DNA from: Mytilus californianus
Taxonomy: Eukaryota
Reading direction: 5' to 3'
Length of the DNA stretch: 64,000 nt
Assembly: GCF_021869535.1 (NCBI RefSeq)
Contig: NW_026262745.1
Location: 43,462,001 to 43,526,000, forward strand
A program made the position numbers and the translations under genes. Shown here in pieces: positions 48,201 to 54,557 of this stretch; within the stretch, counting starts at the first letter, position 1; every line of letters begins with the position of its first letter. Under the pieces are notes generated by a model that was not told where the DNA came from, did not search any database, and worked only from the letters and a program-made list of their open reading frames with translations.

Positions 48201-50079
48201 TATTAAGCGGTTAAATTGAACTCAACCCAGGCCCTAAAATGCCACACTGGCCCTGTGTTTCATGTGGAAAAAATGTCACTTGGTAATGTAAAGCTTTAGA
48301 GTGTGACTTGATATCATGTGGAAAACTTGGTATCATGTAGATTGTCAAGGAGGTATGCAAGCAGTAATGTATAACATAGTTGATAACAGTAACCTGTCCT
48401 GGAATTGTATTAAATGTGGACTCCCATACTTTAGCAGTTCATATTTAACCATATTGAACTATCATCATCTGTTACAACCATTTCTTTTTCGTTATTAAGT
48501 GACATTGGTAGTCCTGGACAGCCCCATGCATGTTCATCAACAATCTCACAAAAGGACAACAGAAAACAAATTATAAAAAAAGGTAATAAGACCGAAAAAC
48601 AAGTTACTTAGACCTTTGAAAATAGTAAATATTAACTTCCAGTCTATCAAGAACAAAAAACCAGAAGTAAATATTTTGATCAATACCACACAGCCTGGTA
48701 TAATTAATAGGTACTGAAACCTGGTAAGATCCTAAAACATCATCATATGAATATTTTGCAAAACATCAATACACAGTATTTAGAAAAGATAGACCACCAA
48801 ATAAAAGGGCAATGTCATGCAGACGTTCTCATAGCTATATCATATAATTTTTGGTGCAACTAGACCCATGATGTGAAATAATATGGATAGAACTATTGAT
48901 ATAAAATGCACGTAAATGTTATATATGTGCTTATTATCGACCTCAACCAGAATGAATCATTAAGTAGAATAAACGTCAGCTCAAAGTCAGCCAAAATTGT
49001 TGGGGGTGGGGGTACTTTAATTTAGGAAACATCAATTGGGAAACATCTAGTGTCATCCCTAGAAAAACAAACCAAAAGCAACATCTGTGATCATACCAAC
49101 TCGAAATGATAAATTATTGTGTTAACCAATTATCCAGTCATTATTGAAAAAACTGAAACCATGCCACCATTTAGAGCGGCAGACCATGATATTGTATATA
49201 TAAAATGTTTACTATCACTAAAAAGATACTAAACTAAGCCACCTAAAATTTATGAACATAAAAACGCAAACTGTCAAAATATAAAAGAGGATATAGATGA
49301 AATATATCAAGATATCATGCATTAAAAGGATAATAAAGATACAAATACACTTTGGATAATATTTAAAAATTCTCTGCAAAAACTATCTCTGAGAACTAAC
49401 CACAGAAAATGATGAGACACAGCAAAGATTTACCTTGAATAACAGACAGTCTTAGGAGACAAATGAAACAATACAAGTAAAAATATCAGAATTATAAGTT
49501 GAAAGGGCAAGGGAACCTAGACCAACTCAAAAAATTAAAACATGAATTACAAAAACAGCAAAGAAGATCTTATTGGAAATATATTGAAGATATGATATGT
49601 GGTATACCAATTGATGACAACCCTACTACTATATCAAAAAGTTTTCCCAAAAATCTTTTTAGCTACATAAAAACACAAAAGTTTGAAAGCTCTAATATTC
49701 CACCACTACGGAAAAAGGGCTCACTAACATCTCATCCAAAAACAAAAGCAAATATACTAAATGAACAGTTCTAAAAAGCATTTACGCCTGTAACAGATGA
49801 CCCCATACCAGATAAGAGCGTCAGTAAACATCCACAGATGCCTGATATTTAAATACAAAAACAAGGAATAGAAAAGCTTCTAAACAATATCAATATTAGT
49901 AATTTTAAAAGCAGCTAGGCCTGATCTCATCCATGGAAACATATTAAAAGAGTGCAAGACATCTCTCACTCCCATCTTGTCAATCATATTTCAAATATCA
50001 CTGGAAAGATCCAAATGACTGGCTTCGTGCAAGTGTATGTCCAGCGTTCAAAAAAGGCGACAAACACGATCATATAAAC

Positions 50080-52473
50080 CACCGTGAACAACGACACATG
50101 CTGGGTGTTGGGTATTTTTGACACGGGGTGGTGATTTTGAAGCGGAGAAAAAGCGATCAAGGTAAGTAAAAGTATCAAAATTTATTTTTTGAGAATTGTT
50201 AGCACCAAATAATATATTGCATGGAAGGAACCGAACCATAATCTATTTCCAACAAGCAGAAGCAGACGTTTCCGGTGCTCATTTTTCTCAAACACCTCTC
50301 CCTAGTTTTCTGTGTTGCAGATTTTGAGACTTCATATTCAAGTTTCAGGATAAAAAACGACTTTTGGCAATTTTTCCCCGTATGATTTATATAGAAATGG
50401 ATTCCTATCATAAAATTGAACCAAATACCAGATTCCTAGTCAAAACATTTTGGTTTTAAAGTTGATTTGTCGTTCGGGGTGTCAGATTTTGCATCTCAAG
50501 GGGTTGAGGCATTCATTAAAACAAGGATAGATGTCCCTATAATTCAGTCTTTATCTGATAATTTATAATTCAAACACACCTACTCTGTTGTGATGACTCG
50601 TCACAAACTTAAAGTATTTCATTTGGCCCATATTTTTTTGTTGTTGAGTAATTAGATATAAGAAGATGTGGTATGAGTGCCAATGAGACAACCCTCCATC
50701 CACGTCAAAATTTATAAAAGTAAACCATTATGTATATTTTTAATGTTAGAAATAGAGTAAAAGACTCAGAAGTATTTTGTTTTATACCTGAACATGATTT
50801 GTTTTCCTTTTCAGTTACCATCATGGTCAGGAAGAAGTCACGTCTATGGCTTAATGCACCAAAACATGGAGCAAATTCAAATCCGGAGCAGACCTCTGTA
50901 TAAGTTTTGCCCGAAGCCGAAGCCAGCAACACCTAAACTTTATCAAATTTCTTCACCAGTTTTCTCTTCAAAGCATACGTGGACGCCGCAAAATGGACTT
51001 ACTCCGAAACGAATTGGCTTACTCACTCCACAGAAATACTTACCGGCATCTATATTTACAAATGACAATAACGCTATAAAAAGACCTGAAGAAGATAACA
51101 CATCAATTTTAATCGATCTAAAACAGCAATTAAAAATCTAGAAGAACATAATCTGGCGACCGATTTTCTTCCATTTATCCAAATTAATTATAAAAGAATA
51201 CAAATTTTCATTAGACAATATTTCCTTTCTTCTTTTCCTTGTTGGCTTGTATAGCTCAATACTATAATATTTGTATGGATAATTATAACAGATATATATA
51301 TAATACAAGTTTTAAAATATGCAGCTGCATTTCATTTTAAATGACCATAGAAACAGATGAATGCCAACATGATCTTTTTTAAACTTTCTTTACCCCAGTT
51401 TTTGATGGGGTTCGTGCTGTTCAGTCTTTAGTTTTCTATGTTGTGTTTTTGTACTATTGTTTTTCTGTTGGTCTTTTTCTATTTTAGCCATGGCGTTGTC
51501 AGTTTATTTTCGACTTATGAGTTTGAATGTCCCTTTGGTATTTTTCGCCTCTCTTTTAAGAAAAGAATGTAAATATAGATGCCAGTTAGTATTTCTGTGG
51601 AGTGAGTAAGCAAATGTTTCGGAATAAGTCCTTTTTGCGGCGTGCACGTATGCTAATGTAGAGAAAACTGGTAAAGAAATTTGATGACGTTTAGGTGTTG
51701 CTGGCTTCGGTCTCAGGCAAATCTTTTACGGAGGTCTGCTCCGCGTGTGTTTTTGCTGCATGTTTTTGGTGCAATAAGCCATAGCCGTGACTTCTTCGAA
51801 TTCCTGACCATGATAGTAACTGAAAAGGAAAAACAAATCATGTTCAGGTATAAACAAAATACTTTGAGACTTTTTCTCTATTTCTAACATTAAAAATGCA
51901 CATTACTCAAAAAACTAAAATATGGGCAAACTGGAATACCTTAAGTTTGTGATGAGTCATCATAACAGAGTGGGTCTGTTTGAATTACAAACTATCAGAT
52001 ATAGGCAAATCTATCCTTGTTTTAATAAATGCCTCACCCCATTGAGACGCAAAATCTGACACCCCGAGGGATTTACATTTCTATGAACAATTAGCTTTAA
52101 AAACAATAAATTTTGACTAAGAAGCTGGCATTTGATTAAATTCTATGATCATGGTGATGGAATTAATTTCTGTATAAATCATACGGGAAAAAATTGCCAA
52201 AAGTAGTTTTTTATCCTGAAACTTGCATATGAAGTCTCAAAATCTGCAACACGGAAAACTATGGAGAGGTGTTTGAGAAAAATGAGCACCGGAAACGTCT
52301 GCTTCTGCTTGATGGAAATAGATTATGGTTCGGTTCCTTCCGTGCAATATATAATTTGGTGCTAACAGTTCTCAAAAAATAATTTTTTTATCTTGATCGC
52401 TTTTTCTTCGCTTCAAAACTATCACCCCGTGTCAAACATAGCCAACACTCCGCATGTGGCGTTCTACACGGTG
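50080..52473. mobile_element. Foldback non-autonomous DNA transposon with about 900-bp inverted arms, CACCGTG ends and a 5-bp TSD (Transib/RAG-like signature)
   Basis: Arms 50080-51060 (containing a 79-bp insertion at 50653-50731) and 51568-52473; TAAAC at 50075-50079 and 52474-52478. Removing the element restores the LINE codons KKGDKHDHINYRPAS. Confidence 0.85.
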
Positions 52474-53075
52474 TAAACTATCGCCCTGCATCTGCAAAAA
52501 ACTCTTAGAACATGTTGTAGCTAGTAATACCATGAAACATCTAGAAAAAAATTAAATGCTATATGACTTACAACATGGTTTTTGATCAGCCCGTTCTTGT
52601 GAAACTCAGTTGATATCATTTATTCAAGATCTTGCAAATTCAAATAATAATGGATTTTGCTAAAGCATTTGGCAAAGTTTCACATCCTCACCTCATGTAT
52701 AAAATCGGCTACTATGGTATAAAATTACAATGCTTTACATTGGATTCAAGACTTTTAACACACAGAACACAAACAGTAGTCCTTGAAGGTGAAACATGAA
52801 ATAAGATTCCTGTAACATCTGGAGTATTTTTAATATTTATTAATGATTTGTCAGGATATATCAAACATACTACATTAAGATTATTCGTAGATGACAGTAT
52901 TATTTTTATGGAAATTAAGAAACCGGATGACACAAATAAAATACAGTCTGATTTAGAAGCGGCCGGCAGATGGGACCGGGACTGGATCATGTATTTTCAC
53001 CCTGATAAATGCAACGTTCTCAGTGTAACACAAACACGAAAACCTTTAGATTTCACTTACAAATTATATGATAAT

Positions 53076-54557
53076 GTTTAAAATTTATTTTATTTAAATA
53101 AATTGAATTGGATTGGGCAAAGCCTATATTAGCCCTCTCCATAAACCAAGGTACAATATATTATATTCAAACAAAACAACACATACACAAACATAATGAC
53201 AGCACAAAATTATTTATTTCAAAACTACCTCATAGCTGACTCGAAGGATGCTTCAAATAGTTAACTAAAATAAAAATAATTTTATTAACATTCTAATTAA
53301 CGAACTCCTATATTGATTAAGAAGCATTACAATAAAGTAAACTGTTCCAGTCAGCTGTTAGATATTATTTTTAGAATAAGTCATTTTTACAAAACAACAT
53401 GTTTGATATCATGTACTTATTTTTACTAATTTATCGCACCTGAAAAATAACGATATTGAGTAAATAATCATATAGATACATTTAAGAATTAAATGACAAA
53501 TTAAAAACCAATTGTCCAGAGAACAATTGAAGGTCTTTTCACACTAAATTTCTAAAATAAATTACCAGAAGCTACTTCCGGTTTACTCAAAGTTACTATT
53601 GGCGCCCAATCATGGAGTTCTTCATATTTAAAAATATAAGTCTTGTATATACTTTTGTCTAAAATAAGGGAGATAGTTTGCTAGAAAATGTCCCCTCAAG
53701 TTTAATGTGATAGCTTTATTCGCACTGATTCCAAAAATATATGGTATCTATATACTTTTGCATGAAATAAGGGAGAAATTTTCTATTTCCGGTTAAGAAA
53801 ATGTTACTTCCTGTCTCTAATGATAGCTTTATTATTACTGATTCCAAATATATATGGTTTCTATATAATTTGCCTAAAATAGAGAGATCATAAGCTACTT
53901 CCACTTTATAGAAGGTCACTTCCGGTCTCTAATGATAGTTTTATATATGGGTATTAAAATAAAAATATGGTTTTTAGGTACTTTACTTTGAACAAAGTGC
54001 AAAAATTGCTACTTTCGATCTACTCAAGGCCACTTCCGGTAAATATCTTTAAAGGTTATATGTCACCCAACGTTTTGCGAAAGACCCCATGGGTTTATCA
54101 TGTACCATATTGAAGAAATAAGCAATTTACCTTAATTTTTAACATTTCAGGGGAAATTACTCCACTAAGATATAATCAGATCGCTTCAGACTGAATGTAC
54201 CATATCTTCGTCTCAACAACCCAAATATTTAGCACTAGTTATTTCATTTCCAGATTTTATAGTATGAGAAAAGATGCACACACAAGCAAAGGGCAAAATT
54301 TAAATCATGACCTTGACCTATGAACTTGACACCATTTTCTATTTGGTGGACCAAGGACCTCAAATTAAGATACCCGAGGTCTCTATCACTAACGGTTCAC
54401 GAGTTACTTGTATATATCTCTTATGACAAATACAAAAGGGGAGATAACTCTCATATGGAATCTCAGTATCGCTTCGGTAAAAATTGATCAAAGCATCCTG
54501 AGGAATTAACATTCAAGCAATTTAGAAAAATAAATTTGTCGATTTCTTTTACATAAT
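53076..54557. mobile_element. Composite insertion into the LINE RT (AT-rich segment plus HINE-like repeat)
   Basis: ATAAT at 53071-53075 and 54553-54557; removal restores YKLYDN-HSLEKVDSTKYVG. Internal cttccggt and tgaccttgacc repeats. Confidence 0.65.

What the first reader, a model, noticed from the sequence alone, without database searches (positions are those of the whole stretch)
50075..52478. Giant foldback element with RSS-heptamer-like ends and a 5-bp TSD (Transib/RAG-transposon signature)
Seen: both ends begin CACCGTG, one mismatch from the V(D)J RSS heptamer CACAGTG. There is a clean TAAAC duplication, validated by restoration of the LINE NYRP codons. The arms are about 900 bp and visibly diverged, around a 507-bp loop. 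Established: CAC termini plus a 5-bp TSD characterise Transib and ProtoRAG/RAG-like transposons, which are reported from bivalves but normally have short TIRs. No RSS nonamer is evident by eye. Inference: a non-autonomous foldback derivative mobilised by a Transib/RAG-like transposase, an architecture I do not recognise for this group.
Basis: partly seen in the sequence, partly recalled or inferred. Interest (0 to 1): 0.72.

Follow-up and report, generated by a model that had tools for sequence, protein, structure and literature searches.

The report
Mussel foldback transposon, P-like enzyme
The flagged stretch is a real but old and gene-less jumping element in a Mytilus mussel; its full-length relatives encode an enzyme folded like the fruit-fly P element transposase with a built-in second nuclease, not a RAG/Transib enzyme, so its antibody-gene-like ends and 5-bp footprint are a look-alike.

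Summary
Window 50080-52473 is a 2,394-bp element with CACCGTG...CACGGTG ends and a TAAAC duplication. Its arms are 981 and 906 bp (89.9% alike) around a 507-bp loop, and it sits inside a decayed LINE whose ...INYRP... frame is restored when it is removed.

It belongs to an abundant Mytilus family: 177 ends match the terminal 32-mer, against 0 for the control. Of 21 end pairs, 13 have perfect 5-bp duplications.

An 8.8-kb full-length copy (L031, 630-bp inverted ends, now decayed) and about 1,400-aa relatives in bivalves, a snail and amphioxus encode one protein. Its AlphaFold model matches Drosophila P element transposase far better (Z 29.7, rmsd 2.6 Å, 321 residues) than HzTransib (12.5), RAG1 (11.6) or Hermes (9.4). 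A YqaJ/lambda-exonuclease domain sits between the first and second catalytic Asp.

There is no RSS-like spacer or nonamer. The window copy's arms are the transposase-side end plus the first coding exon, duplicated in inverted order.

The family fits no described superfamily cleanly: 5-bp duplications rather than P's 8 bp, no THAP domain, and none of the Kolobok hallmarks tested. An earlier follow-up in this scan (s1-307196) reached the same conclusion on other DNA of this genome.

The parts
50075..50079 (.). Left copy of the 5-bp target site duplication (TAAAC)
50080..51060 (+). Left arm (981 bp). It starts with the CACCGTG terminus and the ~60-bp conserved terminal block. It corresponds to the transposase-side end of the full-length element, including the 5' leader, an intron-like stretch and the first coding exon.
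50794..51141 (+). Remnant of the first coding exon of the family's transposase. It is a 115-aa open frame, 48% identical to residues 1-108 of the first open frame (L031:7697-8578:-) of the full-length copy. It is truncated and encodes no catalytic domain.
51061..51567 (.). Loop (507 bp). 51061-51239 continues the first exon of the left side, and 51240-51392 is shared with other foldback copies.
51393..51560 (+). Nested copy of an unrelated ~168-bp high-copy short repeat inside the loop
   Evidence: at least 4,435 first-look candidates, 92-96% identity
51568..52473 (-). Right arm (906 bp), an inverted copy of the same transposase-side end, finishing in ...CACGGTG
52474..52478 (.). Right copy of the 5-bp target site duplication (TAAAC)
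49400..53200 (+). Host sequence: a decayed LINE reverse-transcriptase frame interrupted by the element. The stated extent is approximate.

Best explanation
Window 50080-52473 is an old, non-autonomous foldback derivative of a cut-and-paste DNA transposon family of Mytilus. The family's full-length form is about 8.8 kb with ~630-bp inverted ends. It encodes one large protein (about 1,400 aa in intact relatives) whose catalytic core has the fold of the Drosophila P element transposase. That core is a split RNase H domain with a helical insertion domain and an Asp/Asp/Glu triad. A YqaJ/lambda-exonuclease-type PD-(D/E)XK nuclease, together with long helices, is inserted between the strand carrying the first Asp and the rest of the fold. 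Shown: the element's anatomy, the family-wide 5-bp duplication, descent of the arms from the transposase-side end plus first exon, and the fold and conserved residues of the encoded protein. Inferred: the element was moved in trans by this protein binding the conserved ~60-bp terminal block, with strand transfer staggered by 5 bp. Inferred: the foldback arose when one end plus the first exon was copied in inverted order, for example by template switching during repair after excision. Inferred: the built-in nuclease helps to cut or process the strand that the RNase H site does not transfer. The copy itself is dead. It is about 80-83% identical to other copies, its arms are 10% diverged, and it has no intact gene.
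For: Anatomy and duplication. Family and TSD: 201 scored matches, 6,962 first-look candidates; 177 ends against 0 control; 13 of 21 perfect 5-bp, 2 one-mismatch. Parent element. L031 is 8,828 bp with 630-bp ends at 89% identity. The window arms align to its transposase-side end at 76-82%, and the left arm continues into its first exon. Protein family: YqaJ PF09588 up to 46.8 bits; TNP-like_RNaseH_N PF21787 24.6 bits, equal to the 24.6-bit cut-off; YqaJ in 8 of 11 members, PF21787 in 4 of 11; ~1,400-aa relatives in Mytilus, Dreissena, Mya, Ruditapes; Branchiostoma, Batillaria; 1,713 representative clusters at E<=1e-3. Fold: (model pLDDT 84.8, pTM 0.75). Fold matches: one search gives P element transposase 6pe2_A at Z 29.7, rmsd 2.6 Å, 321 residues aligned, model 28-1147 on chain 189-567. 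The same call gives HzTransib Z 12.5, RAG1 Z 11.6, Hermes Z 9.4, and LHK-Exo/lambda exonuclease Z 15-16 on model 239-458. The offsets at both ends of that alignment place the conserved D67 and E1110 within 1-2 positions of P's D230 and E531 (residue numbers from PMC7776569). Searches show D67, D580, E1110, DxxH (D943/H946) and the nuclease D358/E372/K374 as invariant or nearly so; the nearest named Atlas clusters for residues 490-1159 are all P/THAP9 transposases. A second, distant family in the same genome (L054) has CACGGTC ends, 495-bp ends at 98.6% identity and a 5-bp TTAAT duplication.
Against: Sequence similarity to P is weak: Pfam hits at or below threshold, and no PDB sequence hit outside the nuclease. 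No Kolobok or CACTA/Chapaev transposase structure is solved, so a best PDB match to P cannot by itself separate P from those relatives. The 5-bp duplication, the CAC ends and the absence of a THAP domain do not fit the P superfamily as defined. Both close full-length copies (L031, L056) carry frameshifts and stops, so no intact enzyme of this exact family was seen. No RNA support was found: 0 reads in the raw RNA run and no splice joints. The roles proposed for the nuclease and the origin of the foldback are inference only. Two end pairs look like 6-bp duplications.
Confidence: 0.85

Rival explanations
1. One reading: the element is a non-autonomous derivative mobilised by a Transib or RAG-like (RAG1L/RAG2L) transposase. 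On this view the CACCGTG ends are true relatives of the RSS heptamer.
For: The 5-bp duplication is family-wide. The ends match the RSS heptamer at 6 of 7 positions, and one copy reads CACAGTG exactly. HzTransib and RAG1 are detectable structural neighbours of the encoded protein (Z 11-12.5), as expected for RNase H transposases with insertion domains.
Against: The parent element encodes a protein that matches P element transposase at Z 29.7 / rmsd 2.6 Å, against Z 12.5 / 5.6 Å for HzTransib and Z 11.6 / 4.9 Å for RAG1. The profile search of solved structures, which include RAG1 and HzTransib chains, found only a YqaJ-type exonuclease. A search of the whole genome with the RAG1 Pfam family found nothing, though its control was also silent. 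An invariant DxxH motif lies between the second Asp and the Glu. [quoted passage not shown] There is no variable spacer, nonamer or end asymmetry, and the ends are 60-980 bp long.
Confidence: 0.03
2. The family is a divergent lineage of the Kolobok superfamily, for example near KolobokE, which encodes a lambda-exonuclease-like nuclease. On this view it is not a relative of P.
For: [quoted passage not shown] It also reports Kolobok lineages with accessory nucleases in molluscs, and that Kolobok shares the C/DxxH motif with P, hAT and MuDR. No Kolobok structure is solved, so P could simply be the nearest solved proxy.
Against: The Kolobok hallmarks listed in PMC9587614 were not met. The duplication is 5 bp of varied AT-rich sequence, not TTAA. 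The ends are CA...TG, not RR...YY. No zinc-finger pattern is visible between DxxH and the Glu in the consensus. The nuclease lies inside the catalytic domain, not downstream of it. The nearest named Atlas clusters are P/THAP9, carrying the P-type GTP-binding insertion-domain family.
Confidence: 0.07
3. The family belongs to the CACTA/Mirage/Chapaev group, which also has CAC ends.
For: The CAC termini. No solved structure of that group exists for comparison.
Against: The Pfam scans listed no CACTA transposase family, even with the E-value limit raised to 1. The Pfam, fold and Atlas evidence all points to P.
Confidence: 0.03
4. The stretch is not a mobile element but a local inverted duplication with chance flanking repeats.
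For: None beyond the inverted-repeat shape.
Against: There are hundreds of dispersed copies with the same ends and independent 5-bp duplications. Removing the element restores the host LINE frame precisely.
Confidence: 0.01

Closest known systems
Drosophila P element transposase / THAP9 (P superfamily)
   Same: The catalytic fold matches: a split RNase H domain plus a helical insertion domain (Z 29.7, rmsd 2.6 Å over 321 residues). The Asp/Asp/Glu positions coincide with D230/D303/E531 by alignment offsets. Pfam TNP-like_RNaseH_N gives partial hits. The nearest named Atlas clusters are P/THAP9. A DxxH motif is present.
   Different: The duplication is 5 bp rather than 8 bp (P values from PMC7776569). 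The ends are CACCGTG with 60-980-bp inverted repeats rather than 31 bp. No THAP domain was detected. A ~440-aa insertion with a YqaJ nuclease lies between the first and second Asp. Sequence identity is only about 14%. GTP dependence is unknown.
Galileo and other foldback-like members of the P superfamily (my own knowledge, not checked here)
   Same: Very long inverted ends giving a foldback shape, associated with a P-type transposase.
   Different: Galileo is described with 7-bp duplications and no embedded nuclease. No sequence comparison was made here.
Transib transposons and RAG1/RAG2-like transposons
   Same: A 5-bp target duplication and CAC-initiated ends resembling the RSS heptamer (6 of 7 positions, occasionally 7 of 7).
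   Different: The enzyme is not RAG1/Transib-like. There is no spacer/nonamer organisation or 12/23 asymmetry, the inverted ends are long, and no RAG2-like gene is present.
KolobokE lineage (Kolobok superfamily; PMC9587614)
   Same: A DDE transposase combined with a lambda-exonuclease-like PD-(D/E)XK nuclease, a C/DxxH motif, and presence in molluscs.
   Different: No TTAA duplication, no RR/YY ends, and no zinc finger seen after DxxH. The nuclease is inserted within the catalytic domain, not downstream of it.
ISL2EU (PIF/Harbinger-related; PMC4482050, PMC4122938)
   Same: An element that carries a YqaJ exonuclease domain alongside a DDE transposase.
   Different: In ISL2EU the YqaJ protein is a separate ORF, the transposase is Harbinger-type with a THAP domain, the duplication is 2 bp (AT) and the ends start with GG.
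Tn7 TnsA/TnsB (my own knowledge; an analogy in mechanism only)
   Same: A PD-(D/E)XK nuclease working beside an RNase H-fold transposase, with a 5-bp duplication.
   Different: Tn7 is bacterial, uses separate proteins, and no homology was tested. The analogy is a hypothesis for the role of the nuclease.

Membership tests
Transib / RAG-like transposons | 5-bp target site duplication | tested here: met
   13 of 21 end pairs perfect and 2 with one mismatch. The window copy has TAAAC.
Transib / RAG-like transposons | Ends starting with a CAC heptamer like CACAGTG / CACWATG | tested here: met
   the consensus is CACCGTG, and one copy reads CACAGTG.
Transib / RAG-like transposons | Short inverted ends built as heptamer, variable spacer, conserved A-rich block (RSS-like), with 12/23-type asymmetry | tested here: not met
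   even conservation across positions 1-60, with no variable spacer and no A-rich block; inverted ends of 60-980 bp, with the two ends of L031 89% alike over 630 bp.
Transib / RAG-like transposons | Autonomous copies encode a transposase homologous to the RAG1 core | tested here: not met
   P element Z 29.7, against HzTransib 12.5 and RAG1 11.6; the only hit below E = 0.1 was a YqaJ-type exonuclease, with no RAG1 or Transib chain; no RAG1 Pfam match in the genome (weak test, as the control was silent).
P superfamily | Transposase catalytic domain homologous to P element / THAP9 transposase (split RNase H plus insertion domain) | tested here: met
   (Z 29.7, rmsd 2.6 Å, 321 residues). (PF21787 partial hits at about threshold). 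(nearest named clusters are P/THAP9).
P superfamily | 7-8-bp target site duplication | tested here: not met
   5 bp. The P value of 8 bp comes from PMC7776569.
P superfamily | [quoted passage not shown] | tested here: not met
   no THAP family hit in 18 full-length relatives. Only Pfam was used, so a divergent zinc finger cannot be excluded.
P superfamily | GTP-binding residues of the insertion domain and GTP dependence | not tested
   The aligned range (chain 189-567) must include the insertion domain, but residue-level correspondence could not be read because no model coordinates were available. GTP dependence needs biochemistry.
Kolobok superfamily | TTAA-specific 4-bp duplication and 5'-RR...YY-3' ends (PMC9587614) | tested here: not met
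   varied 5-bp duplications, and ends reading CA...TG.
Kolobok superfamily | Zinc finger between C/DxxH and the catalytic Glu in nearly all lineages (PMC9587614) | tested here: not met
   the consensus between D943/H946 and E1110 shows only two scattered Cys and no CxxC/CxxH pattern. This was judged by eye on the consensus.
Kolobok superfamily | Catalytic core grouping with Kolobok references in a phylogeny | not testable with these tools
hAT superfamily | hAT dimerisation domain, Hermes-like fold and 8-bp duplication | tested here: not met
   no hAT Pfam domains. Hermes Z 9.4 at rmsd 6.7 Å; 5 bp.
ISL2EU | Harbinger-type DDE transposase with THAP, a separate YqaJ ORF, a 2-bp AT duplication and GG ends (PMC4482050) | tested here: not met
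   only the YqaJ domain is shared.

The most novel reading that the evidence does not exclude
The window element is one decayed member of a large clade of animal DNA transposons, found in molluscs and amphioxus and represented by about 1,700 protein clusters. I found no description of this clade in the papers searched. Its P-fold transposase has a working PD-(D/E)XK (YqaJ) nuclease built into its RNase H domain. On this reading, the nuclease cuts the strand that the DDE site does not transfer (as TnsA does beside TnsB in Tn7). The clade inserts with a 5-bp stagger and has independently arrived at RSS/Transib-like CAC ends. It would then be a superfamily-level lineage beside P and Kolobok, and an example of convergence on the features used to argue for RAG ancestry.
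Probability: 0.3. Interest if true: 0.75.

Novelty: new variant of a known kind. Interest (0 to 1): 0.5.

Why it matters
CAC ends plus a 5-bp duplication are widely used as a signature of Transib/RAG-type elements, including in searches for the origin of V(D)J recombination. This case shows that the signature also occurs in an abundant mussel family whose enzyme has the P element fold, so the signature alone does not identify a RAG relative. The family is also unusual in its own right. A lambda-exonuclease-type nuclease is inserted inside the transposase's catalytic domain, its catalytic residues are conserved across phyla, and the insertion splits the DDE domain, so profile-based transposon surveys may miss it. 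That architecture offers a testable model for how P-type enzymes deal with the second DNA strand. The copy in the window itself is old, broken and ordinary.

Tried and rejected
- **RAG1 Pfam family (PF12940) against the whole genome:** no match, but the control genomes were also silent, so this counts only weakly.
- **Sequence searches of solved structures:** with one protein and with the family profile, only the YqaJ-type exonuclease matched. No transposase matched by sequence.
- **Pfam on the pieces of L031:** only a sub-threshold YqaJ hit. Relatives with intact frames were needed.
- **Ends and duplications in other species (Branchiostoma, Dreissena, Batillaria):** So superfamily-wide TSDs rest on two Mytilus families only.
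- **Expression and splicing of the full-length copy:** 0 reads in the raw RNA run (only about 6% of it was read). There were only fragmentary contigs from runs whose RNA status is a guess, plus two contigs over the first exon from one RNA library, and no joints. This is inconclusive.
- **Introns versus decay in L031 and L056:** the frame changes come with in-frame stops and differ in detail between the two copies, so I read them as decay.
- **Literature:** the full-text searches turned up no paper that pairs a YqaJ or lambda-exonuclease-type nuclease with a P-type transposase. The only transposons reported with such a nuclease were ISL2EU and KolobokE. Repbase and Dfam could not be consulted.
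- **Chance inverted duplication:** rejected.
Full report
**Observation**

Reading the window and the inverted-repeat scan confirm the description.
- The element runs 50080-52473 (2,394 bp). It begins CACCGTG and ends CACGGTG.
- TAAAC flanks it at 50075-50079 and 52474-52478.
- Collinear inverted blocks run from the tips inward to 51060 and 51568, leaving 507 nt between them.
- A global alignment of the arms (981 and 906 bp) gives 89.9% identity over 874 aligned positions, with 14 indels.
- Joining the flanks with a single TAAAC restores ...FKKGDKHDHINYRPAS..., a reverse-transcriptase motif of a decayed LINE.

**It is a member of a family, not a chance structure**

- The whole element finds 201 scored matches, from 6,962 first-look candidates, across the genome. 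The genome is a Mytilus assembly of 1.65 Gb (species names appear).
- Many matches come as inverted pairs of the ~900-bp arm.
- The consensus terminal 32-mer has 177 matches within 3 mismatches, against 0 for the reversed control.
- Across 21 end pairs that I could read, 13 have perfect 5-bp duplications and 2 have one mismatch. Two look like 6 bp. The rest are unpaired or rearranged.
- The duplications are AT-rich but varied.
- An almost identical copy 660 kb away shares its flanks at 99.3% over 5.4 kb. It is a segmental duplicate, not a second insertion.

**The parent element**

- Pairing ends at larger distances found an 8,828-bp copy, L031 (G000:C1:63770121-63778948). It has 630-bp inverted ends, 89% alike, and long open frames on one strand.
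- A second full-length copy lies on C106 (L056).
- The window's arms align at 76-82% to the transposase-side end of L031. The left arm continues into L031's first coding exon.
- The 115-aa frame at 50794-51141 is 48% identical to residues 1-108 of L031's first open frame, L031:7697-8578:-.
- So both arms are the same end, carrying the gene's leader and first exon, present once in each orientation.
- Inverted ends in this family range from about 60 to 980 bp. Long ends are therefore a family trait, and this copy is the extreme.
- About 168 bp of the loop is a nested copy of an unrelated, very abundant short repeat.

**What the parent encodes**

- L031 and L056 are decayed, with frameshifts and stops. 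More distant relatives in the same genome keep long frames.
- Public protein sets hold ~1,400-aa relatives from Mytilus, Dreissena, Mya and Ruditapes, and from Batillaria and Branchiostoma.
- An exhaustive search finds 1,713 representative clusters at E<=1e-3 and 318 at E<=1e-30.
- Pfam sees a YqaJ domain (up to 54 bits). It also sees, at or just below threshold, only the second half of the P-element-type RNase H N-terminal domain, always after the YqaJ domain.
- The profile search of solved structures finds only a YqaJ-type exonuclease.

**Fold**

An AlphaFold2 model of a 1,159-aa member, built with a 60-sequence alignment, is confident (pLDDT 84.8, pTM 0.75). Foldseek finds lambda-exonuclease relatives and the P element transposase. 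Re-alignment gives the following matches:

| Structure | Z | rmsd (Å) | Note |
|---|---|---|---|
| P element transposase 6pe2_A | 29.7 | 2.6 | 321 residues aligned, model 28-1147 on chain 189-567 |
| LHK-Exo / lambda exonuclease | 15-16 | 2.3-3.5 | on model 239-458 |
| HzTransib | 12.5 | 5.6 | |
| RAG1 | 11.6 | 4.9 | |
| Hermes | 9.4 | 6.7 | |

- The offsets at the two ends of the P alignment place the conserved D67 and E1110 within 1-2 positions of P's D230 and E531 (residue numbers from PMC7776569).
- D580 follows the fourth strand, as the second Asp should.
- D67, D580, E1110, an invariant DxxH (D943/H946) and the nuclease's D358/E372/K374 are invariant or nearly so across 36-60 diverse members.
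- A protein-language-model search with residues 490-1159 returns only P/THAP9 transposase clusters among its best named neighbours. This is a lead, and it is consistent with the rest.
- The nuclease, with about 120 residues of long helices before it, is therefore an insertion of roughly 440 residues between the first catalytic strand and the rest of the RNase H fold.

**The ends are not RSS-like beyond the heptamer**

In 62 distinct ends, positions 1-60 are evenly conserved. There is no variable spacer and no A-rich block. The two ends of the full-length copy are near-identical, not asymmetric.

A second, distant family in this genome has about 30% protein identity to the first and 35 ends. 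Its ends read CACGGTC, its inverted repeats are 495 bp at 98.6% identity, and one readable pair has the 5-bp duplication TTAAT. So CAC ends and 5 bp may be traits of the whole clade, but this rests on only two families.

**Mechanism**

Shown: the window copy has both conserved terminal blocks, a 5-bp duplication and no catalytic gene, so it is non-autonomous.

Inferred:
- It was moved in trans by the family's P-fold enzyme, with a 5-bp stagger at strand transfer.
- Its foldback shape arose when one end plus the first exon was copied in inverted order during repair.
- The embedded nuclease handles the non-transferred strand.

At 80-83% identity to other copies and with 10% arm divergence, the copy is old. 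I found no intact enzyme of this exact family and no RNA evidence.

**Comparison with known groups**

- It works like, and is folded like, a P-type transposase. However, it fails P's defining 7-8-bp duplication, and no THAP domain was detected.
- It shares Transib's duplication length and CAC ends but fails on the enzyme and on end organisation.
- It shares a lambda-exonuclease-type nuclease with KolobokE (PMC9587614) and a YqaJ domain with ISL2EU (PMC4482050). It fails the TSD, end and domain-order hallmarks of both.
- No Kolobok or CACTA-group structure is solved, so a position nearer to one of those cannot be fully excluded.
- In the papers I could search I found no description of a P-type transposase with an embedded YqaJ nuclease. 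Repbase and Dfam could not be checked.
- A bivalve-wide survey using superfamily DDE profiles does not list P in the passages of its results that I read, and it found a single Transib (PMC10294476). This would fit with a split catalytic domain being hard to detect.

**Limits**

Ends and duplications in other species, and in more families of this genome, were therefore not tabulated.

**Relation to earlier notes of this scan**

A follow-up on another element of this genome (s1-307196) reported RAG-like ends with a P-like enzyme. My result agrees and was reached from this window's own family, but the two are not independent lines of evidence.

**Verdict**

The Transib/RAG interpretation is refuted on its own criterion. 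The element is an ordinary dead copy, but it belongs to an unusual and possibly undescribed P-related transposon clade.

Noticed in passing
window 51393-51560: A ~168-bp short repeat is nested in the loop. It has at least 4,435 first-look candidates genome-wide at 92-96% identity, so it is a young, very abundant SINE- or MITE-like family unrelated to the foldback element.
   Followed up: partly
L002 (G000:C165:44170600-44175993): A second copy of the element together with its LINE flanks lies 660 kb away on the same contig, 99.3% identical over 5.4 kb. It is a recent segmental duplication or an assembly duplicate.
   Followed up: partly
L054 (G000:C24:33840068-33847190) and L055 (G000:C128): A distant sister family of 7.1-8.1 kb has ends reading CACGGTCGCG, 495-bp inverted repeats at 98.6% identity, a TTAAT duplication and frames of 942+413 aa broken by a single stop. 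There are also many ~2.5-kb short forms (35 ends). It looks much younger than the window's family.
   Followed up: partly
L033:1202-1588 (G000:C99:77115040-77118646): A 3.6-kb non-autonomous copy with 97.5%-identical ends carries a 129-aa frame with C2H2 zinc-finger-like motifs. This may be a captured host gene fragment.
   Followed up: no
family ends, positions 1-8 and 42-51 (window 50080-50087 and 50121-50130): The terminal CACCGTGT motif recurs in inverted form (ACACGGGGTG) about 35 nt inward in most copies. This gives a small subterminal palindrome of unknown role.
   Followed up: no
L027 and L031 end pairs: Two copies, including the 8.8-kb full-length one, show apparent 6-bp duplications (AATCAT, TATCGA). 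Alternatively they have a 5-bp duplication plus one extra base at one end.
   Followed up: no
family subtype with ends ...GGGGTGTCGG (e.g. L032-L038): A subfamily is marked by one base change in the terminal 32-mer. It has many ends only 1-2 mismatches from the family consensus 32-mer and inverted repeats up to 97% alike, in sizes from 446 bp to 8.8 kb. It seems to be the most recently active branch.
   Followed up: partly
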